Part shown: positions 1 to 37,390 of the stretch, one piece after another
How the letters are laid out: the number at the start of each line of letters is the position of its first letter
Numbering within the stretch: position 1 is the first letter of the stretch
Source of the DNA: Octopus bimaculoides
Taxonomy: Eukaryota
Length of the DNA: 42,064 nt
Assembly (NCBI RefSeq): GCF_001194135.2
Contig: NC_068982.1
Location: forward strand, 113,234,753-113,276,816
Direction: 5' to 3'
The notes under the pieces: model-generated
Told to the model about the DNA's origin: nothing
The model's input: only the letters and a program-made list of their open reading frames with translations
Database searches by the model: none
Made by a program: the position numbers and the translations under genes

Positions 1-849
1 CATGGTAAATACTGGGCTAAACTAAATGCAAAAGAAATAGGCAGAGAAAAATCCCAACAATGGTTGAGAAGCTCAGGACTCAAAGCAGAGACTGAAGGAT
101 TTTTAATTGCTGCACAAGACCAAAGCCTCCCCACCAGAAATTACCAAAAACACATAATGAAAAGAAACATAACAAGTAACTGTAGAATATGTGGAGATGG
201 ACAAGAAACAATAAATCATATTATCTCTGGCTGCCCAGTCCTGGCTAAGAAGGAATATATTCACAGACATGACAGAACTGGGACCTATATACACTAGAAG
301 CTATTCGAACACTATGGAATAACAACAGAAAAAAGATGGTATAAACACACGCCAGAAAAGGTCACAGAAAACGAGAAAGCAACCATACTCTGGGATATGC
401 CAATACACACGGATAGAGAAATTAAGGCAAATAGACCAGATATAGTTGTCAAAGATCATGAAGAAAAAAAATGCTTTCTAATTGATGTATCAATACCAGC
501 AGATGACAACGTTTCTCTAAAAGAAATGGAAAACTTTCAAAATACAAAGACCTGGATATAGAGATAAATCGAATGTAGAATCTAAAAACAGAAACAATTC
601 CTATCATAGTAGGTTCCTTAGGTATAATAAAAAAATATTGAGACAAATACATAACAAAAACACCAGGACTTACAAATATATATAACATACATAAAATTGC
701 ACTACTGGGTACTGCACACATTCTATGCAAAACACTTTCAATACAGTAAACATAAGAGCACCACAGCACACCACAGCACATACCCAAGGCGCACAGAGCT
801 GCGCTCGGTAGTGAAGTGAGAGCCCGTTATAAAAATAAAACTACTGAAC
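1..849 (+). mobile_element. Dong/R4-like non-LTR retrotransposon, 3' part (CCHC knuckle + RLE endonuclease + 3' UTR), pseudogenised; element 1
   Basis: Translation gives WLRSSGLKAETEGFLIAAQDQ, knuckle CRICGDGQETINHIISGC (C-X2-C-X8-H-X4-C), RHD, ILWD, NRPDIVV..FLIDV (PD-D/ExK core). In-frame stop at 295-297, a frameshift near 530, ORF end ~749, then an (AAT)n tail. Cut by the window start. Confidence 0.9.

Positions 850-889
<40 letters not shown>
850..889 (+). repeat. (AAT)n microsatellite between elements 1 and 2
   Basis: Direct reading. Confidence 0.97.
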
Positions 890-1848
890 GCATGGCATGT
901 AAAAAACACTAGAAAACCACTATTATTGAAAGTAAGAAGATCAGTTTTGTGTAGAATGGAAGATTACAAAGATAAAGCACTGTACAAGCACTTGAGAATG
1001 AACGAAACTGAAAATAGGTGGATAAAGAAAGGAATTCATAGGGATGTTGAAGGTAAGACAGACAAAGAAAAAGATGGTTATGGATGACTAAAGGTGATTT
1101 AAAACCAGAAACAGAAGCTCTAATCTGTGCTGCCCAAGAGCAAGCATTAAAAATGAATTACATCAAATACAGAATAGATAACAGATCAAAAAGTGATACG
1201 TGCAGAATCTGTGAACAAAATGGTGAAAGCTTATGGCATATAACCTGTCAATGTACGCCACTAGCCCAGAAAGAATATAAGAGACGTCATGACAATATAA
1301 CAAGGATTGTCCATTGGACACTCTGCAACATGTATGGAGCTGACAAAGTAAAAATGTGGTACGTACATAAACCCGAAGGCATCATTGAAAATGATAATGC
1401 AAAGATCTTATCGGATTTTATGATTCAGTGCTACCATGAGATAGAGAATAGAAAACCAGGCATAATATTATTTGAGAAAGAAAGCAAACGATGCTGGATC
1501 ATAGATATAACATGCCCAGCTGACATCAAGGTATTGCGATAAGGAAGAAAGAAAAGTCGATAAATATGACAGGATAGCTTTGGAGATTAAGCAGTTGTGG
1601 TCGCTGAAAAAGGTTGTAGTAGTACCAATAATGGACGGAGCCCTGGGAACAATGAGTAAAATCCTTGAGAAGTACATGGAACAAATAAGGGCTGCAATAA
1701 GAGTGGAGCACTTGCAGAAAACAGCACTGCTTGGAACCGCTCGAATACTCCAGATGGTGCTCGAAAAATAAGGGTATTACCTTAGTTCACTGGTAGTAAA
1801 CAGCTGGCACCGTAGTACATCTCCAGCGTTAGAAGCTATGCACAGACA
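890..1848 (+). mobile_element. Dong/R4-like RLE retrotransposon, 5'-truncated; element 2 (different family from element 1)
   Basis: ORFs 1084-1542 and 1580-1771: LKPETEALICAAQEQ, CRICEQNGESLWHITCQC, KRRHD, RKPGII..WIIDITCP, VVVPIMDGALG, LQKTALLGTARIL. Distinct 3' UTR, then an (AAT)n tail. Confidence 0.9.
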
Positions 1849-1882
1849 ATAAGTGATGATGATGATAATAATAATAATAATA

Positions 1883-1935
<53 letters not shown>
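1849..1935 (+). repeat. (GAT)/(AAT)n microsatellite
   Basis: Direct reading. Confidence 0.95.
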
Positions 1936-1936
<1 letters not shown>

Positions 1937-2465
1937 CCCTGATGCAGTACCAGGCAGTGGCTCTCATGGTTTCTGATCTTAATTGATTGGAAGTGTTATC
2001 ATGTACATTGTTTTGTCTTGGTATAAAAGATGGGCTACAGCAAATATTCTGCTCAATACCACAGATTTGCTTGTCAGTTGCTTGACCTTAACCAGTTGAG
2101 CATGTTCCTTGGTGGCTGATGATATGTGCATCTCTGATCATGAGCAGAAGTATTGAGCGGAATTCTTTGGGGTTTGAATAATTCACCTTTGGAAACACGG
2201 GTGTTTCGCTCAACATCCTTAAACAAACCTTATTCAGGGACCCTTTTGAATGGGATGGGCTACTCGACCTGAAGAAAATTCCAACTGGGCCCCACCAGCG
2301 AGGTCATGCGTTGTTTATCTAGATATGAGATCACCATTCGCGCACATATGGTTGTGATGCATGTGCTTGGTGTACCCTTATTAGACGGGTAGTCATGATG
2401 GGTATACTGGGCTTCGTATATTTTACTCCAGTGTCACTTTGATGGCATGCACTGCTCTCTCACTC
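1936..2465 (+). mobile_element. Non-coding ~530 bp interspersed element flanked by (AAT)n; putative non-autonomous retroelement, copy 1
   Basis: Aligns by eye to 11563-11790 (+) and 36613-37112 (-). No long ORF and no clear tRNA A/B box at its 5' end. Ends ...ctgctctctcactc followed by (AAT)n. Confidence 0.85.
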
Positions 2466-2516
<51 letters not shown>

Positions 2517-2540
2517 CACGATGATGATGGTGATGATTTC
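2466..2540 (+). repeat. (AAT)n/(GAT)n microsatellite
   Basis: Direct reading. Confidence 0.95.
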
Positions 2541-2544
2541 TTTT

Positions 2545-3843
2545 TTTAATTTCAAGAGAAGTTTAAGGTGCTTAAAATATGTAGTGATGACCATGTCTTT
2601 CATTGCTTTATGCAAGATATTGTCCAGCTCCAGCATCCCAAGGTACTTGTACCCATCATCATCTTGGTCTCCCATTCTCGCTCCGTTTGGCAATTCTATG
2701 CCCGTACAATTTACTTTTTTCGCCCACTTCAAAGTAAGCACTGCACAAAACCCAACTCAAGAAACCTTGTGATTGCCATCAATATATGGACCTTGCTATA
2801 GTGCACCTATCCTGAAATAGACACAAGCGGAGATTAATCTACTCGATCTCACTACCTGAAAAACAATGGTAATGTATGGTGCCCTCCACCATAAGGCGAA
2901 TGTTCACAGGCTCTACATGAAAAGCGGTAAAGGTGGATTTAACAAGACTGGACTTTAGAGTGCTCACGAATTCCGATCAAGAACAGCCAATGCGAGTGAA
3001 GAAACCCTACTCCTTATGGAATTACATGGTCAGTTCCATCGTGAAACCAACAAATTAAAAGACCAGGGAACATCATGGAGGTGGCTTAACAAGGATAGCC
3101 TGAAAAAGAATACTGAAAGCCTAATCATCGCTGCCCAGGACCAGGCATTGAATAACAACTCAGTGAAAAAGAATATATTCCACACAAGTGCAACGGACCT
3201 CTACAGAATGAGTGGGAAATTGTTAGTGCTTGTGAAAGTCAGGCACAGAAAGTGTACAAGCGTAGACACGACAAGGCAGCCCAAGACCTCTACTGGTTAC
3301 TATGCCGTTAGTATGAATATAAGGTTACGGGTGCTCGGTACCAACATACACCAGAAAAAGTAATGGACAAAAAGGGAAAGGCAAAGATCCTCTGGGACTT
3401 TGACTTCCAGACAGACATGGCATTAGAGCACCGAAGGCCGGATACAATAACTTTTAGGTGGGACAAACATGAGTGCGTAATAATTGCCGTGGCAGTTCCA
3501 GGAAATCTACATATCATTATGAAAGAAAGAGAAAAGATTGATAAGTATGGAGACCTGAGAATTGATATCGCTAAGATGTGGGAGGTACGGGAGTCAAACA
3601 TAAAGGTTATCCCTGTTGTCATCAGAGAATTGGGTTCAATACCACCCAATCTGAAAAATTCATCTGAAAACTTTAGAAATACCCTACAATCTAGGTGTAT
3701 TGCAAAAGTCACTTGGAATTGACGCATATTGTGTAAAGTACTGTTTGTCTGAGGTCCTTGTTGTGACTTGACAAACAGTACAAACTCCCGGTAGACAATA
3801 TTTTCAATCAACAACCTCACGATATTGTATAATGTGCGGCATC

Positions 3844-3844
<1 letters not shown>
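2545..3844 (+). mobile_element. Dong/R4-like RLE retrotransposon, element 3, with inverted 5' segment (2545-2747 on minus strand)
   Basis: Minus 2747-2545: CAVLTLK..VNCTGIELPNG..YKYLGMLE..YFKHLKLLLKLK (late RT). Plus from 2748: KPNSRNLVIAINIW, GALHHKANVHRLY, WRWLNKDSLKKNTESLIIAAQDQAL, ILWDFDFQTD, RRPDTI, IPVVIRELG. Followed by an AAT tail. Confidence 0.88.
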
Positions 3845-3896
<52 letters not shown>

Positions 3897-3949
3897 TGAT
3901 AATAATAATAATGATGATAATAATAACGACGACGACGACGACGACGACA

Positions 3950-3993
<44 letters not shown>

Positions 3994-3996
3994 AAT
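3845..3996 (+). repeat. Compound (AAT)n-(GAC)n-(GAT)n microsatellite
   Basis: Direct reading; source of the poly-N/D, poly-I and poly-Y/H ORFs. Confidence 0.97.
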
Positions 3997-4870
3997 AAAA
4001 GCAGTCAATTTGCAAGAGATACGAACGCCAAGACAGATATAGAAGACCGGTGGCTATGGATGATAAGGAGTGAACTGAATATAGAGACAGAAGCGCTTAT
4101 ATCCGCAGCACAAGAAGACCGTTAAGGACCAACTGTGTGAAGTGCAGAATCGACAACTCTACCAAGAGCGACAAAGGGAGAATGCGTATTGAGATGAGTG
4201 AAACGGTATGGCACATCGTTAGCGAATGACAGAAATTGGCACAACGCGAACAGAAAAGGTGACATGACAATGTGGTAAGAATGATCCAGTGGGGGGCTCT
4301 GTGGAAAGCACGGCCTAGAAAGAGCAAAGGTGTGGTATGGGCAAACTCCTGAAGGAGTAACTGAGAAGGAAGATTGGAAATTCCTGAGAATGAAGATTGG
4401 AAAGTGGCATTCAATAAGTCAGAGCGATCACCTGACCAGACATCGAAACCAGACATTGTTGTTGTGAATAAAAAAGAAAGAACTTGCATGATAATCGACA
4501 TGACATGTCCTCGAAGACAAGAGAATCAAAGAGCAAGAAGAAAAACTGAACAACTTAGACGATCTGAAGTGAGAAATGCGAAGGCTATGGTCAACGAGGA
4601 GAGTAGACGTGACACCAATAGTAATTGGCACACTTGGAAGTATTAACGCTCTACCAACATGGCTCAAAATGACTGGTACAAATGTAAAGGTAAAACACCT
4701 ACAAAAATCGGCATTGCTTAGAATTGCAAGAATTCTTCGCAGGATACGTGAAGCATGTCCGGTAAACAAGTGTCGCCTTGGTATGCTGGCTGTGGACAGC
4801 TGATACTTTCCAACTTACCCAGGAAAATAAACTGAGAATATTCATCAAATAACAAAAATGATAATAATAT
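3997..4870 (+). mobile_element. Dong/R4-like RLE retrotransposon, 5'-truncated and more degraded; element 4
   Basis: RWLWMIRSELNIETEALISAAQE, SKPDIVVVNKKERTCMIIDMTCP, VTPIVIGTLG, LQKSALLRIARIL across several frames. Short AAT-like tail. Confidence 0.85.
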
Positions 4871-8428: not shown

Positions 8429-9965
8429 CAGAAACCATCACTGGAGGAAGACATGGAAACATACGTGAAGATGATAAAATAAGCATGGCCGGCAACATAA
8501 GCCAAGCTCCAAGATTCTCTCACCATTGCTTATATATACTGCGCCATCAGAACATTCCCCACCAGTTTTGACAAACATCAATTCATGGTACTCGAGTATA
8601 GTTTTGAATTTTGAATAGATATTTAGCAACAAGAGTAAAGAAGTGTTCTTTGCTTGTTACGCCAACTGCTTTGGATTCCTCCTAAATCTTGCTACCCAAA
8701 CTACAATAAGATACTTAAATACTCTGCAGTGCCTTAGAAAGAAGTATTCAAAGCCTCTATAATTTTCGAGTTCAAGTGTCAATATACTGCAGTGAGCACG
8801 AACACATTCAATATAGTGTTTAAGAAAACTTCGACATAGATGTTGGCTTGAAAATCAGATAATTAATTTTTGGTTAGTAAGAAAATATAACGATGTTTAT
8901 TTACAAGCTACAACTAATCAAGAACAAAATCTTTTGACAAAATATACGTATAATACCATGATTGTAATATAGACGGTTTTAATATAGTCCGATATTATTT
9001 TGTTGACTTACTGTTAGTCTTGAAGATTAATTTTATTTCTTACATCTTCATATTTATTGGTGCTAATTTTCACTACATCTCACAAATGAGATTTTATCTA
9101 TACTTCCAACTCAATTGCCTTAAGAAAACCGCGGTAACACAAATTTATTGATGGAATAATGCTACGAAGATACTTGATTGTTTACGCAGAGTATGGTATA
9201 AAATTAATCGTCTATAATTCTAGACCCTTAATATCATTTAAAGTAATAACTCCAAATTTGCTTATCAATNNNNNNNNNNATAAATATATATCATCCTAGA
9301 TAACGTTCTTTTCATTTACATATCTTCAATCTTAGCAAACTTAATTTCCAGAGATTGGTGTAAACAATTTATATCAGAAGCATTTTTTTCATTGAGCTTA
9401 TTTATTTATTGTTGCATATGATACCTATCTTTGCTTCAGGGAGAATGATAAACATTTTCCTCGCAAATTATTGACTACTTTAATCTGCAAGAATCAATCT
9501 TTTAGTATGTTTATCAAGAAAGGCTCCCTCCATTTCAGAATATGTTATACAAGAGAGAGAATATCTCATTTAAATATAAAAATAGAAGATGCCCTTCTGA
9601 CATGGCACAAAGTCTGAATAATATAGCAGAACTATGCTGACACCTAAGCGATTTTACTATGCGAAATCATTTTGGATTTATCATCACTTGACTACTTTGC
9701 AAGTAAATAACATTATTAATTTCAAAACGTATTTTGTTTATAATGCATTATAGGTATTTTAAAGTATCTGTAGTAGACAACGGGGATAATACGTTTTTGG
9801 TGTAAACATAAAGTCAGCAAAACTATTTACAAAATTCCATTCTGTTTCGGTGTTTCTTTTCGTGTGTTTAGGGTATGTGCTTACAGCACACAATGTACCC
9901 TTGCATTTCAGATTGATTCTAAAAGTATAACATTTACCACATCGAAGTCTATAAGAGGATTTGAC

Positions 9966-10110
9966 TGAATCGTTAGCACGCTGGAATAAGTGCTTAGCAG
10001 TATTTCGTCCATCTTTACGTTCAAATTCCGCTGAGGTCCATTTTGCTTTTCATCCTTTCGGTTAAGTACCAGTTACGCACTGAGGTCGATGTAATCAACT
10101 TCCCCCAATT
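9966..10110 (+). mobile_element. tRNA-like SINE family A
   Basis: gaatcgttagcacgctgg..gttcaaattccgctgaggtc..aagtaccagt..gatgtaatc; homologous to the 15238, 37209, 14212(-) and 18781(-) copies. Confidence 0.8.
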
Positions 10111-10130
10111 TCAGCCAATAGAAGAAAGGA

Positions 10131-10210: not shown

Positions 10211-11449
10211 ATTTCCACGTTAATTTCATGTAATAACACGTCTAAATACGAAATTTTATTGAGGTGGTGGTGTGGAAAAGACTGTAATACAATAATTCCC
10301 TCTATTTAGTTACATTAGTTTACGACCATATTTCGTTGACGATATTCTTGACATATTTTGTACAGAAAGTATTAGATACATAAGTACAAACGTTACTGGC
10401 GTTGCTAAAACAATATCAATTAAGTATTCGTGAGAATCAATTAACTACGTTTTATGATAAACGTTTAATAATATTATGATATTGTAGATACTATAAATAT
10501 GGATGCGTGAGTCAAGAACAGTCTTTAATTTCTTATGTAATCTCTGAGGGTAGTCCACGGCCGGCTTAATAAGTCAATGATAAGTCAATGTTTAAACAGT
10601 ACATGTTTACTTAGAAGCCCCCATAAAATAGAGGTGGTGTTTCACACAAAGAAAATTAACCATTTTCAATCGCAATATTCATATATAGAGGTAGAGTTAA
10701 CATGTGCTGTAGCAGTAGTGTTGTACACATTAATGTCTTCAGAATGTGTCTATAGTAGAATTCGACTAAGTAAATATACACGTTGCTGAAATAAAGGAAA
10801 GCAAAACAATAGAATCGATATTCGGAAATTTAAGCTCCAGTCCATTTAAGGCTTGTCGTATTAAAGACTAATTATAAGAGTAGATAATTACCACTACCTT
10901 GATTTTTGCTGGGTTCTCTAAAAGAAAAAATTATGGGAACATCTTTGAATTCTGATTAGATAAGCAGTGATGGTTGTAAAGCAATGCCGGCTTATTGCTC
11001 TGAATTTTACCGAAAAGGGAGCGAGAACAAATTTGCATACTTATTATAAAGGCAATACATGGCAGATGAGTACTGCTCTCTCTCGTTGTTCCAATAAATC
11101 GGTGAACAACAAAAATTCCACCCAGTTGCATGAAGGTCGCTACAGTCTTGAGCAAAATTTTAAAATCAATATTTAACGAACGTCTAGCCGATTCTGCTAT
11201 ATAATTTCATTGCATGTGTCGAAGCATTCCATATTTCACTTAATCTATAAATGTTACAACTTCACATTGTCGAAAACTGTGAGAGCAGGTGTCAGAAACC
11301 AAAAAATTGTCTCTATCAATAATGTTTCTCATGTTCTAATTAATTTAATGTACACACAATAAGGTTTTCCTGTGTCTGTATCATAATGCATAAATTCAAT
11401 AGAGACTAGTAAATTTTAGTCAATATTTATGAGATGCATCTCCTAAATT

Positions 11450-11464
11450 AATAATAATAATAAC

Positions 11465-11535
<71 letters not shown>

Positions 11536-11562
11536 TAATAATGATGATGATGATAATAATAA
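11450..11562 (+). repeat. (AAT)n microsatellite
   Basis: Direct reading. Confidence 0.97.
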
Positions 11563-11790
11563 TGCAGTATCAGGTAGTGGTCCTCGTGACATCTGATGTT
11601 AACTGATTGGAAGTGTTATCATGTATATTGTTTTGTCCTGGAATAAAAGATGAGTTAGAGTAAATATTCTGCTCAATACCACAGATGTACTTGTCAGTTG
11701 TTTGACCATAACCAGTTGAGCATGTGTCTTAGTGGTTGACGATATGTGCACCTTTGATCACAATCAGTAGTAGTTGGGGAGCATCATAGC
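11563..11790 (+). mobile_element. AAT-associated non-coding element, copy 2, 3'-truncated
   Basis: Homologous to the first ~230 bp of 1936-2465; directly follows (AAT)n. Confidence 0.85.
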
Positions 11791-11912
11791 TGAATAAGGA
11801 TAAACAATGTATCGTTGCATTTCAGATTGATTCCAAAAGTATAACATTTACCATATCGAAGTCGATTCGAGGATTTGACTGAATCGTTAGCACGCCGGAC
11901 AAAGTGCTTAGC

Positions 11913-13085
11913 AAAAGAGGGACTCATAAAAACCAAAGCCATCTCCATTAGAAGAGGAATATTTCAGGGAGACACACTCTCTCCACTCCTTTTCTGCTTG
12001 GCACTGACGCCTTTATCTGATATTCTAAACAGAACTAGAACTGTTACGGCAAAACAATCAGCCACCACTTATATATGAATGATCTAAAACTGTACGCTAC
12101 AAACGATTATCAACTGGAAACATTACTGTTGACATTACATGGATTTACCAAAGAAATAAACATGAAATTTGGCTTAGAAAAATGTGCCAAAGCAACCTCG
12201 AAAATGGGAAAGCTAGTTAAGAGTAGCAACATCACACTAGATAAAGTAAATGAAATAAGAGAATTAGACGAAAGCCAGACATACCAATACTTAAAAATCA
12301 ATGAACTAGATACGTTACGACACACACAGATGAAAGAGAAGATAATAAAAGAATACTATAGACGAGCTAGATTAATACTAAATACAGAGCTTAATGCGAA
12401 AAACAAGATAATAGGTATCAACAATCTAGCCGTCCCAGTTATAAGTTACAGCTACATTATTCTTAACTGGACACTAAATAAACTAATCAAAATAAACAGA
12501 AAAACAAGGAAAATAATGACAGCACTTTGAATGCACAACCCAGAATTGACATAGGAAGGTTATATATACAGCGTATCGAGGGTGATAGAGACCTGATACA
12601 ACTAGAAAACTATTACAAAATAACCACCATAGGACTACAAAACAAAATAAAAATTGTTTCAGTCTTTAAGGAAGCTAACAAATACAAAAAAGAAGTCATA
12701 ATGCCTCACAACTATGAAGACAAAAAAAAAAAAAGAAACAAAAGCTGTAAAACAAATGAAATCCAAACTAAAACTGGAACAGCAATGGATTGTGATAAAA
12801 CGATGACAAGAAAAACCACTTCATAGCAAATACAGCGTGAAACTAAACAGAAAAGAAACTGACAAAGCAAAATCCCAGCAATGGCTGAGAAGTTCAGGAC
12901 TCAATGCAGAGACTGAAGGATTTCTAATAGCAGCACAAGATCAAAGTCTTCCTACCAGAAATTACCAAAAACATGTAATGAAAAAAATACAACTGCAGAA
13001 TATTTGGAGTTGGACAAGAAACAGTAAATCATATTGTCTCTGGCTGCCCAGTCCTGGCTAAGAAGGAATATGTTCACATACAAGA
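11913..13085 (+). mobile_element. Dong/R4-like retrotransposon internal fragment (RT domains 5-7 to knuckle); same family as element 1
   Basis: RRGIFQGDTLSPLLFCLAL, YMNDLKLY (YMDD equivalent), MKFGLEKCA, LNAKNKIIGIN, IGRLYIQRIEG. 12880-13078 closely matches 61-260 (WLRSSGL(N/K)AETEGFLIAAQDQSLPTRNYQKH). Confidence 0.92.
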
Positions 13086-13109
13086 CAGTGCAACCACAAG
13101 GCGAGACTG

Positions 13110-14000
13110 GATGAGACCCCGGTGATTTACTTCGTGGGGGTTGAAATGTTGGGTAGTCAGATCACTAGGTCTGACAAGAAGCATGTTAGAAGAATCTGCA
13201 GGGAGATCGAAAGTCAACTTCATATTTCTGACTTAAGTAATGCCTACAGAGCAATCGCTATGCTTATGGGATCAAAACCTCGATGTACTAGAGTTTTAGA
13301 ATTCTAATTGGCGGCTTACTGTGCATCGTACTTTGAGGAATTGTATAAGGACCCACCTAGAAAGTTTTGCATACTACGATGCCTTCAGCGCTGATAAACC
13401 ATCTGACACTCAGTTATGATCCGCCGTCTATTGATAAGGTCCGTAAGAGTGGGACAGCAGTTAGTGTCTGCTGTACCTATAGGGAGATGATCAAGAAAGT
13501 TGGGCCTGCTACAGGCGTTTTTCTTTTAGCAGATCATCTCCTTACTGAATGAGGATTATTATTATTATTATTGCTCTCAGGATGGGTAAAAGTGACCGTC
13601 ACGGCTACAACTATTGAGCTATTATACTCCACTCTTCTCAGTGTCTGGTAAGGTCTTTGCCGTGGTTATTCTAAACAGAGTGCAAAATCATTTGCTTGCC
13701 TTTCAGCGACCGGAACACTTAGAGTTCACGCCTGATAAGACAACTACTACCAGGATCCTGCCTTACCGAGTACACATCGAACGCAGGCAGAGTTTTCAAT
13801 AGAGGCTGCATACAGCTTATGTCGAGTTCAACAAGGCATTTAACTCGGTCGACCGGATTGTGCTCCCTTGGGGTTTGGAGAATATCGGAACTGTGGGCGC
13901 AGTTCGGATTGGGTGCTTAACATCTGACCTTTTCACAAGTAGATCTGTGGTTCGTTAGGGTTGTGATTTGACTCCTATTCTATTTAATATCTGCATGGGA
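13110..14000 (+). mobile_element. RTE-clade LINE internal remnant (linker + RT domains)
   Basis: RSDKKHVRRICREIE, SYFEELYK, DPPSIDKVR, SVSGKVFAVVILNRVQNHL..QRPEH, AYVEFNKAFNSVDR, GCDLTPILFN. Confidence 0.85.
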
Positions 14001-14543: not shown

Positions 14544-15237
14544 GTCCGTTCTGGATTGCACCAGCAATTCAAACGCATTATGTCCCATTGTATTATACCA
14601 ATTCACTTCCAGTATTACGTTAATGGCACATGCGTAAACGGAAAACGCAACTGTATGACATGTAGCAATTTCACTTGATTGAACAACTAAATGCTCATCT
14701 CCGAAACCGAGAGAGGATTAACCAAATCCGTTCGCGCGGAGAAAAAAATTTTCAAATTGAAGTAAGACCTCATTATTGGATGTATAATAGAACCTTCACT
14801 CTTAGCCTGTTGGTAATGGTTATGAAAGTGTTTGCGATGTGATGATGACTATAATGATTATGCTGTTATAGTTTAGCCCTCATTTCAGCCCAAACTGAGT
14901 AGAACTAAGATGAAAGACATTCACATCAAGACCATCCTGTTTTTCTCTAGTGTTACATAATCCAATGTTTACTGCAATTTGTTCAAGATCACAATGATGT
15001 ACTTTAAGGGAACTGGAACGGTGATCATGGTAGTTGTGATGTTTGTGGTGTATTCATGGCTATGATGATCATATTGACGATGGTGGCGTTGGTAGTGATG
15101 GCTATGGTGATGGTGATGGTTGGTGGCGTTGTAGTTGGGGTGCAGTAGTGAAAGCCGTAATCTACCATCGCTCATAGGGACGTTAGTAGTATTAGCAGCA
15201 GCAGCAGTTTTTAATAACATCATTAGTAGCGTAACAT

Positions 15238-15450
15238 GGTGAGCTGGGAGAATCGTTAGGACGCTGGACAAAATGCTTAGCGGCATTTCGTCCGTCTTTA
15301 CGTTCTGAGTTCAAATTCCACCGAAGTCGACTTTGCGTTTCACCCTCTCGACGTTGATACAATAAGCAACAGTTGAAGACTATGGTAAATGTATTTGACT
15401 TCCCCCTTCACTAAAATTGCTAGCCTTGTGACAAAATTTGAAACCATTAA
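15238..15450 (+). mobile_element. tRNA-like SINE family A, near full length
   Basis: A-box-like ggtgagctgggagaatcg, B-box-like gagttcaaattcc, 3' gccttgtgacaaaatttgaaaccatta. Confidence 0.85.
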
Positions 15451-32784: not shown

Positions 32785-33670
32785 CAGGGGTTGGGCAAAA
32801 TAATGGAAACACCTTAAAATTTCAAACAAATTTATTTTAATATGGGGTAGGACCACATTTGGCAGTAATTACAGCTTGAATTCCACGAGGTATGGACTTG
32901 TACAGTTTGAATTGTTTCCAAAGGAATTGTTGTCCATTTTCAGCTAAAACAATCTTCTAGTGATGATGGTGGAGGATATCGACTCCTTGGTTTTCTAAAA
33001 TGCACCATAAATGTTCAATAATATTGAGATCTGGGGACTGTGGTGGCCGGATAAGATGTTCGACTTCATTAGAATGTTCCTCGTGCCATTCAGTAACAAT
33101 TTTACCTGTATGAATTGATGCATTATCATCCTGAAAGATTGCGTTTCCCTTCGGAAGCAGTTCTGCAACCATAGGATGAATTTGATCAGATAAAATGCTT
33201 AAATAGTCTTAACTATTAATTCTGCCATGAAAGGACACCATTAGGCCGGCGGATTTCCAAGATATACCCCACCCCAGATCATCACAGATCCTCTTCCGTG
33301 TTTAACAGTTGGAAGAAGGCAGTCTGCGTTAAATGCTTCTTTTGGCTGTCTCCACACGTATACTCGGCCGGTTGTCGGAAATAAGGTAAAGGATGACTCG
33401 TCCACGAAAATAACATTCTCCCACTGCTCTAGGGACCAATTCTGTAAAAGCTTTGCAACGTTTGTTTTTGAAAGTAGTGATTTTCTGATTGCATCCCTCC
33501 CGTGAAATCCGGCTTTGTGGAGCTCCCGGCGAACAGCTTTTGTGGAAAGTGGGTTCTCAAGGTGGTCATTAGACTCTGCAGGAATTTTAGGAGCTGTACT
33601 TTTGTGATCCTTTCTAACAATTCACGTAAGAGTCCGACGGTCCCTATCTGAAAGTTTTGGTTTTCTTCTG
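32785..33670 (-). mobile_element. Tc1-like transposon, 3' two-thirds with right TIR; DD36E transposase pseudogene
   Basis: TA then caggggttgggcaaaataatggaaacacc TIR. Minus strand: RKPKLSDRDRR, VIFVDES, FQDDNASIH..SPDLNIIEHLW, GPTPY* at 32837. Confidence 0.92.
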
Positions 33671-35098
33671 GACACTCTTATAATCATTAACATTTATTTA
33701 AAGCTGAGATTATACATTCAAATTATTTCTTGTTATAATGTGAATATTTAATATTTAGTAGATATGCCCTTTACATTTTTCAGTGCAAAGACCTTATGAA
33801 GCATGTTACTGATCAGATGACGAATATTGTATTGCAGAATGTCTCGCCAAGTTTAATGCAGTAACATCAAAAGATCTGGTTTTGAAGATACTTTCTTGTT
33901 CTTTTTATGAAGTGTCCTGTCCATTATTTTCCAGAGGTGTTCAATAGGTTTCATACCTGGTGACTGGTTTGGACATGGAAGCTTTTTAATGCCATTCTCA
34001 TTCAACAGATCTTGGGTCATTTTAGCTGTGTGACAAGGAGCCCCATCTTCCATATATAAAGAGTATTCTTCAATCATTTTACTACTGGAGAAGATTGGAA
34101 GATATCCTTTCTGCAATATGGACATATATTTATCTGAGTTTACCTTTCCCTTACACTTCACTAGCTCTGATCAACCATTGCTCCAAACTGCTCTCCAGCC
34201 CATCACAGAATAGCTGCCGTTTTTCATTGTCCACTGCAATCTTTTCACATCAAATTCTTGATCACAGAATTTCCAGACCCACACTCAACCACTGTCAGGA
34301 AATACAGCGAGTCTGGAATCATCAGTGTCCCAAAATGCTAGTGGCCGCTCCACCATCTCACTGGCCCAATCTTTTCTCCGTTAGATGTTGGCTGGTCGAC
34401 AAAGTGCCATAGTAACCAAGTTTGTGGAGATATCTGACAGCTATTCTGGGACTGGCATCAATTTTTTCTGCTATATTAGAGGTCTTGCAACGTGGATTAT
34501 CCTCCACACTACTCTTAAAAAAGAGAAGGGTCCTGTCAGAGGGCCCAGGTTGATCTGGGTGAAGTGATGTGGACTCCTTCTCTCTCTGGTGAATTGGACA
34601 ATTACTCTATTAACTGTTGAAGGCAAGATCACAAGGTCTTCGGCGATTTTATGCTTACTATGTCCAGCTTCAGAAAGACCCTTTGAAATTCAGACAGTTC
34701 CAAGGCTTCTTTTATATATGGCACGATTAAATAGTCACATATAGTTACGTTCTGGTTTCAACGAATCAGTTGCAGCGCACACTTCAACGTGAAAGGTCAT
34801 GGCTTTCCATTAGAGTAACGCGTACTGTAAAAGGTGAGGCTGTTGCAGCCCAAACTACAACGTGATAGGTCGTGGCTTTTCATCATTGTAACGCGTGCTG
34901 AAGAACGTGAGGCTATAATTCCAGTTCAGAAACCAGTCCACGTGAGGCCAAATACTTGAATGTATGTTGAGATATTGTCCTAGCCCGTTTGCCCAGAGAC
35001 GGTTGATTTCTGTAGTCATCACCAGTTTTTTCCGGCGATTTAAATAAGAGCTTTGACTGTTATTTCCAGGCAGGTAGACATACATAGTATGTCCTTTG

Positions 35099-35847: not shown

Positions 35848-36612
35848 NNNNNNNNNNNNNNNNNNNNNNNNNNNNNNNNNNNNNNNNNNNNNNNNNNNNN
35901 NNNNNNNNNNNNNNNNNNNNNNNNNNNNNNNNNNNNNNNNNNNNNNNNNNNNNNNNNNNNNNNNNNNNNNNNNNNNNNNNNNNNNNNNNNNNNNNNNNNN
36001 NNNNNNNNNNNNNNNNNNNNNNNNNNNNNNNNNNNNNNNNNNNNNNNNNNNNNNNNNNNNNNNNNNNNNNNNNNNNNNNNNNNNNNNNNNNNNNNNNNNN
36101 NNNNNNNNNNNNNNNNNNNNNNNNNNNNNNNNNNNNNNNNNNNNNNNNNNNNNNNNNNNNNNNNNNNNNNNNNNNNNNNNNNNNNNNNNNNNNNNNNNNN
36201 NNNNNNNNNNNNNNNNNNNNNNNNNNNNNNNNNNNNNNNNNNNNNNNNNNNNNNNNNNNNNNNNNNNNNNNNNNNNNNNNNNNNNNNNNNNNNNNNNNNN
36301 NNNNNNNNNNNNNNNNNNNNNNNNNNNNNNNNNNNNNNNNNNNNNNNNNNNNNNNNNNNNNNNNNNNNNNNNNNNNNNNNNNNNNNNNNNNNNNNNNNNN
36401 NNNNNNNNNNNNNNNNNNNNNNNNNNNNNNNNNNNNNNNNNNNNNNNNNNNNNNNNNNNNNNNNNNNNNNNNNNNNNNNNNNNNNNNNNNNNNNNNNNNN
36501 NNNNNNNNNNNNNNNNNNNNNNNNNNNNNNNNNNNNNNNNNNNNNNNNNNNNNNNNNNNNNNNNNNNNNNNNNNNNNNNNNNNNNNNNNNNNATTATTAT
36601 TATTATTATTGA

Positions 36613-37112
36613 TTGAGAGAGCAGTGCATGCCATCAAAGTGACATTGGGGTAAAATATACGAAGCCCAGTATATCCATCATGACTACCCGTCTGATAAGG
36701 GTACACCAGGTACATGCAACACAACCGTATGTACGCGACATGGTGATCTCATATCAAGATAAACAACGCATGACCTCGCAGGTGGGGCCCAGTTAGAATT
36801 TTCTTCGGGTTGTGTAGCCCATCTCGCTCAAAAGGTCCCTGAATAAGGTTTGTTTAAGGATGTTGAGCAAAACACCCATGTCTCCAAAGGTGAATCATTC
36901 AAGCCCCAAAGAATTCATCTCAGCACATGGCTATGATGCTCCCCCACTACTTCTGCTCGTGATGAGAGATGCACATATCATCAGCCAGCAAGGGGTATGC
37001 TCAACTGGTTAAGGTCAAACAACTGACAAGCAAATCTGTGGTATGAGTAGAATATTTACTGTAGCCCATCTTTTTATACCAAGACAAAACAATGCACATG
37101 ATAACACTTCTA
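36613..37112 (-). mobile_element. AAT-associated non-coding element, copy 3, 5'-truncated by ~50 bp with intact 3' end
   Basis: Reverse complement of 1990-2465; (ATT)n on both sides (36593-36612 and 37113-37205). Confidence 0.9.
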
Positions 37113-37158
37113 ATTATTATTATTATTACTATTATTATTATTATTATTATTATTATTA

Positions 37159-37205
<47 letters not shown>
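37113..37205. repeat. (ATT)n microsatellite
   Basis: Direct reading. Confidence 0.97.
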
Positions 37206-37207
<2 letters not shown>

Positions 37208-37208
37208 G

Positions 37209-37390
37209 AAAGGTGGCAGTTAGAACTGTTAGCACGCTTGACGAAATTCTTAGCGGCATTCCGTTCGTCTTAACGTTGAGCTTAAATTCCACCGAAATCT
37301 ACTTTGTTTTTCATCCTTTCCAGGTTGATAAGTACCAGTCGACTTCCCTCTTCCTCAAAAACTGCTGGCCCTGTGCCAGAATATGAAAGC
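37209..37390 (+). mobile_element. SINE family A
   Basis: gaactgttagcacgcttgacgaaattcttagcggcatt..aaattccaccg..tttcatcctttc..aagtaccagt..ctggccctgtgcca. Confidence 0.8.

What the first reader, a model, noticed from the sequence alone, without database searches (positions are those of the whole stretch)
1936..2465. Non-coding, non-tRNA passenger element that appears to share the (AAT)n target and polarity
Seen: three copies (1936-2465 +, 11563-11790 +, 36613-37112 -). In element orientation each is preceded by (AAT)n, and both copies with a 3' end are also followed by it. Copy 3 is 5'-truncated but has the same 3' end, the usual signature of target-primed reverse transcription. Copy 1 lacks ~22 nt (gggggagcatcatagccatgtg) present in copy 3. 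There is no ORF and no clear pol III box, and its 3' end matches none of the four RLE 3' UTRs in this window. Inference: a non-autonomous element mobilised by a Dong/R4-like enzyme, possibly analogous to R2-derived SIDEs (5' UTR/ribozyme fused to 3' UTR). I could not fold a convincing ribozyme by eye.
Basis: partly seen in the sequence, partly recalled or inferred. Interest (0 to 1): 0.75.

Follow-up and report, generated by a model that had tools for sequence, protein, structure and literature searches.

The report
Octopus (AAT)n-targeting non-coding retroposon
A roughly 550-base non-coding repeat of the octopus genome always sits inside AAT microsatellites in one orientation, as the Dong-type jumping genes beside it do, so it is most likely a parasite of their copying machinery, though the enzyme-encoding partner was not found.

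Summary
The window (Octopus bimaculoides) has exactly three copies of a non-coding repeat of about 530-550 bp: 1936-2465 (+, full length), 11563-11790 (+, 5' part only) and 36611-37112 (-, lacking the first ~50 nt). Each abuts (AAT)n in the same sense.

Three further copies on unrelated sequencing contigs (66-79% identical to the window copies and to each other) have the same 5' end (GCCCTGATGCAG), the same 3' end (..CTCTCAMTY), AAT-type repeats on both sides and the same polarity. The element is therefore a discrete unit, not the random 5'-truncated tail of a LINE.

It has no ORF, tRNA, Rfam match, HDV-like or hammerhead fold, or terminal inverted repeats.

Four mutually divergent Dong-like LINE tails (zinc knuckle plus restriction-like endonuclease) share its arrays and polarity. 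The best reading is a non-autonomous retroposon inserted by target-primed reverse transcription using a Dong-clade enzyme.

The SIDE/ribozyme analogy is unsupported. Its ends match none of the LINE 3' UTRs I could reach, and no partner was identified. I rate it a new member of a known kind, of modest interest.

The parts
1936..2465 (+). Copy 1: full-length element (530 bp). 5' end GCCCTGATGCAG, 3' end ..CTCTCACTC. Carries a private 24-nt internal deletion after position ~218.
1865..1935 (+). (AAT)~24 array upstream of copy 1. It is also the 3' array of the Dong-like LINE tail at 889-1864.
2466..2516 (+). (AAT)17 array directly downstream of copy 1.
11563..11790 (+). Copy 2: element positions ~9-236 of an older subfamily (85% to copies 1 and 3). 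The 5' junction to (AAT)n has AT microhomology. The 3' side breaks off into a 110-nt repeat fragment and then a 5'-truncated LINE.
11449..11562 (+). (AAT)~38 array, with GAT variants, upstream of copy 2.
36611..37112 (-). Copy 3: 5'-truncated (lacks the first ~50 nt) with the complete common 3' end. The junction to (AAT)n has AT/ATT microhomology.
37113..37207 (-). (AAT)~32 array upstream of copy 3 in element orientation.
36593..36610 (-). (AAT)6 downstream of copy 3, running into an assembly gap (N 35848-36592).
1..849 (+). Dong-like LINE tail 1 (CCHC zinc knuckle, RLE domain, 3' UTR with a conserved hairpin), followed by (AAT)13 at 850-888. It is a candidate source of the enzyme class, not shown to be the partner.
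889..1864 (+). Dong-like LINE tail 2, 5'-truncated, of a different family (39% aa identity to tail 1). Its (AAT)n array holds copy 1.
2959..3844 (+). Dong-like LINE tail 3 (31% aa identity to tail 1), followed by (AAT)n at 3845-3926.
3995..4860 (+). Dong-like LINE tail 4, degraded. The 3' side runs into AT-rich repeat and an assembly gap.
11914..13088 (+). 5'- and 3'-truncated LINE of the tail-1 family (RT motifs FQGDTLSPLLF / YMNDLKL; 12822-13088 is 84% identical to 1-275). It is joined through a 110-nt repeat fragment to copy 2.

Best explanation
The element is a non-autonomous, non-coding retroposon family of octopuses, about 550 bp long with fixed 5' and 3' termini. It integrates only into (AAT)n microsatellites and always with the AAT strand as its sense strand. 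The most likely mechanism has four steps. (1) An element RNA ending in the 3' terminus plus some (AAU)n read-through is produced. (2) A Dong-clade LINE protein (reverse transcriptase plus C-terminal zinc knuckle and restriction-like endonuclease) nicks the (TTA)n strand of an AAT array. (3) It reverse-transcribes the element RNA from that nick (target-primed reverse transcription). (4) The cDNA 5' end is joined to the upstream repeats, sometimes prematurely, giving 5'-truncated copies with AT microhomology. Shown here: discrete ends, AAT repeats on both sides, constant polarity, 5' truncation with a common 3' end, absence of coding capacity, of pol III-type heads and of inverted repeats, and co-occupation of the same arrays by Dong-like LINE tails of identical polarity. 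Inferred: the RNA intermediate, the identity of the enzyme, and how the RNA is recognised. Recognition could be by a partner LINE's 3' UTR that was not sampled here, or by pairing of the (AAU)n tail to the nicked target.
For: Three window copies and three independent Logan copies (L003, L006A, L006B; 66-79% identical to the window copies and to each other) share termini. The 5' end AAT|GCCCTGATGCAG is seen in c1, L003 and L006B. The 3' end ..CTCTCAMTY|AAT is seen in c1, c3, L003 and L006B, with a shorter variant in L006A. All six informative copies are AAT-sense, as are LINE tails 1-3 of the window and the contigs L001 and L002. L006 holds two head-to-tail copies separated by 24 nt of AAT-type repeat, the usual picture for site-specific retroelements. 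The 5' ends lie at element positions 1, ~9 and ~51, the last two with AT microhomology to the array. There is no ORF, no tRNA or Rfam family, no TIR and no protein homologue except spurious octopus ORFs. The neighbouring LINE C-termini carry zf-RVT and align weakly to the C-terminal part of solved R2 protein. Dong elements are the known (TAA)n-specific LINEs, one of them in a snail (PMC3812793), and Dong-R4 LINEs are abundant in octopuses (PMC13282606; PMC9115989; PMC8967140). Copy 2 is fused through a 110-nt repeat fragment to a 5'-truncated Dong-like LINE directly behind an AAT array. A template switch during reverse transcription would give that architecture.
Against: No partner was identified. 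The element's 3' 100-200 nt and 5' 140 nt score no better than shuffles against the four LINE 3' UTRs of the window and the LINE 3' UTR in L007. By eye they do not resemble the short tails of L001, L002, L012 or L013. There is no direct evidence of an RNA intermediate, of recent activity or of empty sites. Only six informative copies were seen, and only one is clearly 5'-truncated. Older relatives (L007, L009; translated copies P0139, P0144) show no clear AAT flank, which may be decay but was not proven to be. The species of the Logan runs is unknown.
Confidence: 0.65

Rival explanations
1. SIDE-like deletion derivative: the element is the 5' UTR (possibly with a self-cleaving ribozyme) of one particular Dong-like LINE fused to that LINE's 3' UTR. 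It would be recognised by that LINE's protein exactly as R2 SIDEs are. This is a special case of the main explanation.
For: It shares target and polarity with Dong-like LINEs. The termini are conserved across subfamilies 66-79% identical to each other, which suggests constraint on both ends. A hairpin of about 70 nt lies near the 3' end of the young copies, with z -2.1 in c1 and -0.8 in c3; L003 scores -1.6 but adopts a different fold. Many unsampled Dong families must exist, since the four in the window are only 30-40% identical in protein sequence.
Against: No ribozyme was found: Rfam gave nothing at E<=10 and the HDV-like descriptor scored at shuffle level without conservation between copies. 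The 5' region has no conserved fold, and the 3' consensus fold is weak with an unfavourable covariation term. Neither end matches any LINE UTR available. No full-length octopus Dong element could be examined.
Confidence: 0.2
2. It is simply the long 3' UTR of an autonomous LINE, and all copies are 5'-truncated LINEs.
For: Copy 3 is 5'-truncated with a common 3' end. In L007 an element-like sequence lies about 150 nt downstream of a Dong-like ORF stop with no obvious AAT array between them.
Against: c1, L003 and L006B start at the same nucleotide directly after AAT repeats, and c2 starts within 8 nt of it. No copy continues upstream into an ORF. The 3' UTRs of the four window LINEs are about 100-120 nt, not 550 nt. 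The L007 spacer contains a decayed AAC/GAT-type repeat, and the same arrangement of LINE tail, array and element is seen in the window at 889-2465, where the array is intact.
Confidence: 0.05
3. A true SINE transcribed by RNA polymerase III from an unrecognised or much-diverged small-RNA head, with a Dong-compatible tail.
For: Its size, lack of coding capacity and high conservation of the 5' block (GAAGTGTTATCATGT..TTGTCTTGGTATAAAAG) across subfamilies fit a SINE. Octopus genomes hold hundreds of unclassified SINE families (PMC13282606).
Against: ARAGORN finds no tRNA in any copy. There is no tRNA, 5S, 7SL or snRNA hit in Rfam even at permissive thresholds. By eye, the A-box and B-box resemblances are poor and wrongly spaced.
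Confidence: 0.07
4. A DNA transposon derivative (PIF/Harbinger-type MITE with TAA/TTA target duplication, or a Helitron inserting at AT) that accumulates in AAT repeats. Alternatively, a segment spread by duplication of microsatellite-containing DNA.
For: AAT arrays contain the TAA/TTA and A|T sites such elements prefer. Target-site duplications cannot be read inside a microsatellite.
Against: There are no terminal inverted repeats. The ends are not Helitron-like (no 5' TC or 3' CTRR) by direct reading. All six copies have strict orientation relative to the AAT strand, which cut-and-paste elements do not show. One copy is 5'-truncated with microhomology. Sequence beyond the arrays differs between loci.
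Confidence: 0.03

Closest known systems
R2 SIDEs (non-autonomous R2 derivatives of Drosophila; Eickbush & Eickbush, Mobile DNA 2012, cited from memory)
   Same: Short, non-coding and without a pol III head. It sits at the same specific target and in the same orientation as an RLE-type, site-specific LINE, and presumably uses that LINE's TPRT machinery.
   Different: SIDEs demonstrably carry the partner's 5' HDV-like ribozyme and 3' UTR. Here no ribozyme and no shared UTR could be shown. The target is a microsatellite rather than 28S rDNA.
Dong and other (TAA)n-specific Dong/R4-clade LINEs (Xiong & Eickbush 1993; Kojima & Fujiwara 2004; summarised in PMC3812793)
   Same: Target (TAA/AAT)n, fixed polarity, flanking repeats on both sides, 5' truncation and tandem stacking in one array.
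   Different: The element encodes nothing, is about 550 bp, and has a fixed 5' end. Its sequence is unrelated to the Dong-like tails in the window.
Classical tRNA-derived SINEs with LINE-derived tails (Ohshima/Okada model, PMC3747384), including the octopus tRNA-Core/tRNA-Deu SINEs (PMC8967140)
   Same: Non-autonomous retroposon dependent on a LINE enzyme, of similar length.
   Different: It has no small-RNA head, no demonstrated common tail, and strict target-site specificity.
LINE-dependent retroposons without a small-RNA promoter in the RepeatMasker/Dfam classification (RTE-derived, L2-derived and, as I recall, R4-derived; from memory, a literature search for 'R4-derived' found nothing)
   Same: This is probably the formal bin the element would fall into.
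   Different: Membership needs a shown derivation from a Dong/R4 element, which is missing here.

Membership tests
Classical SINE | 5' head derived from tRNA, 5S, 7SL or snRNA with an internal pol III promoter | tested here: not met
   ARAGORN found 0 genes in the window and in L003, L006, L007 and L009. Rfam found none at gathering threshold, none relevant at E<=10 over 1800-2600, and none at E<=1 in the four loci.
Classical SINE | 3' tail shared with a partner LINE | tested here: inconclusive
   There is no similarity to the four LINE 3' UTRs of the window or to the L007 LINE UTR. However, most octopus Dong families could not be examined.
R2-type SIDE | 5' end is the partner's 5' UTR with an HDV-like self-cleaving ribozyme | tested here: not met
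   No Rfam ribozyme matched. The HDV-like descriptor gave 3 start sites against a shuffle mean of about 2.8, with different sites in copies 1 and 2. There is no conserved 5' fold. The descriptor is crude, so a very atypical ribozyme is not excluded.
R2-type SIDE | 3' end is the partner's 3' UTR | tested here: inconclusive
   There is no match to the available LINE tails, and no full-length partner candidates could be obtained.
R2-type SIDE | Same insertion site and orientation as the autonomous RLE element | tested here: met
   Six of six copies are AAT-sense, as are LINE tails 1-3 and contigs L001 and L002.
Dong/R4-clade LINE (as a truncated copy) | RT plus CCHC/RLE coding sequence, or remnants of it | tested here: not met
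   All six frames are closed. BLASTX against 120 Dong-like C-terminal proteins gave nothing better than E=0.02, and that on the wrong strand. Protein searches returned only spurious octopus ORFs.
Dong/R4-clade LINE (as a truncated copy) | Common 3' end with 5' ends scattered along the element | tested here: not met
   5' ends cluster at position 1 (c1, L003, L006B) and about 9 (c2). Only c3 is truncated, at about 51.
TPRT-inserted, (TAA)n-specific retroelement (works-like test) | Repeat on both flanks, fixed polarity, 5' truncation, tandem stacking | tested here: met
MITE / Helitron | Terminal inverted repeats, or 5' TC...CTRR 3' with a 3' hairpin | tested here: not met
   No inverted repeat involves the termini. 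The ends read GCCCTG...CACTC.
Penelope-type retrozyme | Hammerhead ribozyme motifs | tested here: not met
   No hammerhead family appears in the Rfam scans. A CTGATGA word at about 2118 has no matching fold.

The most novel reading that the evidence does not exclude
Template choice by the tail alone. Four or more mutually very divergent Dong-like families with unrelated 3' UTRs, and this element with yet another 3' end, all land in the same repeat with the same polarity. The enzyme may therefore select RNAs mainly through pairing of a terminal (AAU)n read-through tail with the nicked (TTA)n target, not through a specific 3' UTR structure. Any transcript ending in (AAU)n could then become a passenger, and this element would be a dedicated 'tail-only' parasite. 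It may also carry its own reiterated 5' promoter module of about 135 nt (seen duplicated in two other loci).
Probability: 0.2. Interest if true: 0.6.

Novelty: new member of a known kind. Interest (0 to 1): 0.4.

Why it matters
Non-autonomous parasites of restriction-like-endonuclease, site-specific LINEs are documented mainly for R2 (SIDEs). I could find no description of a microsatellite-specific counterpart for the Dong clade. Such an element would give a short, natural template for asking how Dong-type reverse transcriptases choose their RNA, by 3' UTR structure or by repeat-tail pairing. That question bears on current efforts to use R2-like enzymes for targeted insertion. It also explains part of the 'unknown/unclassified' repeat fraction and of the complex AAT-microsatellite nests in octopus genomes, and it accounts for several spurious 'uncharacterized proteins' in the O. 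bimaculoides proteome.

Tried and rejected
- Exact-pattern scans for a conserved 25-mer found nothing in metagenome, viral or prokaryote-genome collections. No eukaryote genome collection is searchable by DNA.
- The look-up of encoding contigs found no record for the UniRef or metaclust translations P0001 and P0005, or for a window ORF.
- What worked was searching translations of the spurious minus-strand ORFs. This identified the species and gave four Logan loci.
- Two look-ups on other Dong-like C-terminal proteins, made in the hope of hitting the partner's 3' UTR, gave unrelated tails from unknown species.
- The ribozyme idea was rejected: Rfam, the HDV-like descriptor and alifold of the 5' region all gave nothing.
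- Whole-element folding is no better than shuffles, z -0.36.
- TIR, MITE and Helitron readings were rejected (and direct reading of the ends).
- The hammerhead or retrozyme reading was rejected.
- Hidden LINE coding remnants were rejected.
- Literature searches for a described Dong-dependent non-autonomous element, for 'R4-derived' retroposons, and for the identity of the SRA runs and the GCA_024449705.1 assembly gave nothing useful.

Full report
**Observation**

The window is AT-rich eukaryotic assembly sequence with gaps and many microsatellites. The three copies are real: 1936-2465 (+), 11563-11790 (+) and 36611-37112 (-). A profile HMM built from seven copies finds exactly these three in the window and nothing else at E<=1.

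Without flanks, copies 1 and 3 are 92.8% identical, and copy 2 is 85% identical to either. In element orientation each copy is preceded by a long (AAT)n array. The two copies that have a 3' end are followed by one; copy 3's array runs into an assembly gap. AAT/ATT runs of 4 or more units cover 1.2% of the window, so five of five boundaries abutting them is far beyond chance.

Copy 3 lacks the first ~50 nt and copy 2 the first ~8 nt. Both junctions show AT or ATT microhomology with the array. The 24-nt block missing from copy 1 is present in nearly all other copies, so it is a private deletion.

**Species and further copies**

I therefore searched with translations of the accidental minus-strand ORFs.

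This returned nine proteins. Eight are 'uncharacterized proteins' of Octopus bimaculoides (A0A0L8H6S8, A0A0L8HJ33 and others); the ninth (P0005) comes from metaclust with no species name. They fix the species and show that copies are spread over the genome.

An exhaustive profile search found 21 such ORFs, most from Logan assemblies. Four could be traced to contigs:

- **L003** carries a full-length copy about 77% identical to copy 1 over aligned columns. Its junctions read ..gataataataataataaAT|GCCCTCATGCAG... and ...GCTCTCTCAATT|aacaataataaaag.
- **L006** carries two head-to-tail copies. The first ends ..TCTACTC, followed by AATAATAATATTATCAATAATAAT. The second starts GCCCTGATGCAG and ends ..CCCACTC|aatattgatggtaatgacgac.
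- **L007 and L009** are older, decayed relatives without clear AAT flanks.

In the alignment the 5' terminus is shared by c1, L003 and L006B, and nearly by c2. The 3' terminus is shared by c1, c3, L003 and L006B, with a shorter variant in L006A. All six informative copies have the AAT strand as sense strand.

**What it is not**

- All six reading frames are closed.
- BLASTX against 120 Dong-like C-terminal proteins gives nothing meaningful.
- ARAGORN finds no tRNA in the window or in the extra loci.
- Rfam gives nothing at gathering threshold, and nothing relevant at E<=10 over the element or E<=1 over the loci. This covers tRNA, 5S, 7SL, snRNAs, and the HDV-like, hammerhead and twister families.
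- A home-made HDV-like nested-pseudoknot descriptor gave three start sites in copy 1 against about 2.8 in shuffles, and the sites are not shared with copy 2.
- The whole element folds no better than shuffles, z -0.36.
- The 5' 170 nt have no consensus structure, and the 3' 200 nt have only a weak one with an unfavourable covariation term.
- The last ~90 nt of the young copies form a long hairpin (z -2.1 in c1, -0.8 in c3). L003 scores -1.6 but folds differently, and the hairpin is absent in the decayed L006 copies. I treat this as a weak lead.
- There are no terminal inverted repeats, and the ends are not Helitron-like.

**Surroundings**

Window 1-4860 is a stack of four 5'-truncated LINE tails on the + strand. 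Each has a CCHC zinc knuckle (CRICG..H..C) and a PD-D/ExK-type motif (RPDIVV...IDV). At least three are followed by (AAT)n. Copy 1 sits in the array behind tail 2.

The tails hit Pfam zf-RVT. An intact relative, L001, aligns weakly to residues 899-1020 of solved R2 protein at E 0.0017. The four tails are only 30-40% identical to each other at the protein level, and their 3' UTRs of about 100-120 nt are unrelated.

Independent contigs of the tail-1 family also end in (AAT)n or (ATA)n and conserve a 3' hairpin. Dong elements are the known (TAA)n-specific LINEs, one of them in a snail (PMC3812793). Dong-R4 LINEs are abundant in octopus genomes (PMC13282606; PMC9115989; PMC8967140). I call these tails 'Dong-like' on the basis of target, domain order and that literature. 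No phylogeny was made.

**Mechanism**

The anatomy is that of target-primed reverse transcription by a site-specific RLE LINE: a fixed 3' end, a mostly complete but sometimes truncated 5' end joined with microhomology, target repeat on both sides, one orientation only, and stacking in tandem within arrays. Because the element encodes nothing, the enzyme must come in trans. The only elements seen with the same target and polarity are the Dong-like LINEs that share its arrays.

What is shown is the insertion signature and the co-occurrence. The RNA intermediate, the enzyme and the recognition mode are inferred. I put 0.65 on this explanation as a whole.

The element's ends score at shuffle level against the four LINE 3' UTRs of the window and the L007 LINE UTR. 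They also do not resemble the tails of L001, L002, L012 or L013. So either the true partner is an unsampled Dong family (the SIDE or common-tail model, 0.2), or recognition relies mainly on the (AAU)n tail pairing with the nicked target (the most novel reading, about 0.2).

**A suggestive detail**

Copy 2 (element positions ~9-236) is followed by 13 nt. Next comes a 110-nt fragment that is 91% identical to 9890-9999, the 5' part of another repeat that continues into a tRNA-type SINE body. Directly after that comes a 5'-truncated LINE of the tail-1 family starting inside the RT domain.

Neither the SINE-like piece (it has no 3' end) nor the LINE (no AAT at its 5' junction) can be explained by simple nested insertion. 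A reverse transcriptase switching templates from LINE RNA to repeat RNA to element RNA before joining the upstream AAT array would give this order. Deletions could give it too, so I count it only as consistent.

**Rivals**

- **Long LINE 3' UTR (0.05).** It fails on the shared 5' end. The one locus that looks like it, L007 with a Dong-like ORF stop about 150 nt upstream, mirrors the window arrangement 889-2465, where the array between LINE and element is intact.
- **True pol III SINE (0.07).** It lacks any recognisable head.
- **DNA-transposon or duplication models (0.03).** They fail on orientation, the absence of TIRs and the differing outer flanks.

**Comparison and novelty**

The element works like an R2 SIDE or a LINE-dependent retroposon without a small-RNA promoter. 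It is not shown to be a SIDE, because the ribozyme and the shared UTRs are not met or not testable.

I know of no published Dong-dependent, (AAT)n-specific non-autonomous element, and the literature searches found none. Repeat libraries such as Repbase or Dfam, which I could not query, may already hold it as an unclassified or 'R4-derived' entry. I therefore rate it a new member of a known kind, with interest 0.4.

The decisive tests could not be run here: a genome-wide census, a search for a LINE sharing either end, empty sites, and transcript ends.

Noticed in passing
window 11791-13088 (compare 9890-9999): Copy 2 is fused through 13 nt to a 110-nt fragment 91% identical to 9890-9999, and then directly to a 5'-truncated Dong-like LINE starting inside the RT domain. 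The order of the pieces would fit a template-switch chimera made during reverse transcription, but deletions are not excluded.
   Followed up: partly
loci behind P0001 (A0A0L8H6S8) and P0009 (A0A0L8FNA5); element positions 1-135: Both translated copies read past the element's 5' end into ..CAATACCACAGATTTGCT-AAT-GCCCTGATG, which is element position ~118-135 followed by a new position 1. The first ~135 nt, which contain a conserved GGTATAAAAG, are therefore tandemly reiterated in at least two other loci. This is reminiscent of LINE 5' monomers. Gene-model splicing could confound the reading.
   Followed up: partly
window 1-4860: A stack of four different Dong-like RLE LINE tails sits in one orientation. 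They are only 30-40% identical to each other in protein sequence and have unrelated 3' UTRs, yet at least three are followed by (AAT)n. Several deep Dong lineages therefore coexist on one target.
   Followed up: partly
window 9960-10129, 15235-15445, 37208-37375 (+): Copies of a tRNA-type SINE (..GAATCGTTAGCACGCTGGAC..GAGTTCAAATTCCACCGAAGTCGAC..CATCCTTTC) that ARAGORN does not call. Two of them abut (ATT)n arrays, one at its 5' end (37208) and one at a truncated 3' end (10129). Whether that reflects targeting or arrays being insertion hot spots is open.
   Followed up: no
window 770-849; L001 880-950; L002 ~960-1030: The tail-1 LINE family keeps a GC-rich hairpin (GCGCACAGAGCTGCGC) about 45 nt before the (AAT)n junction in three independent copies, one of them from a different assembly (GCA_024449705.1). 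Folding gives z about -2.7. It is a candidate RT recognition element.
   Followed up: partly
window 32960-34690 (-): Two degraded Tc1/mariner transposase remnants (HTH_Tnp_Tc3_2, DDE_3) lie side by side.
   Followed up: partly
window 2520-2760 (-) and 13089-13800 (+): Further LINE fragments. A post-RT 'YKYLG' segment on the minus strand lies directly behind the array that follows copy 1. An unrelated LINE replaces the 3' part of the tail-1-family LINE at 13089. Pfam found no family for the minus-strand fragment at 2520-2756, and the fragment at 13089 was not scanned.
   Followed up: no
UniProt O. bimaculoides proteome: At least nine 'uncharacterized proteins' (A0A0L8H6S8, HJ33, HAP1, I0P0, I1L9, H316, G3R2, FNA5, G9T0) are translations of the antisense strand of this repeat. 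They are annotation artefacts.
   Followed up: yes
window 34769-34914: Two copies of a 73-bp tandem repeat at 82% identity, of unknown nature.
   Followed up: no
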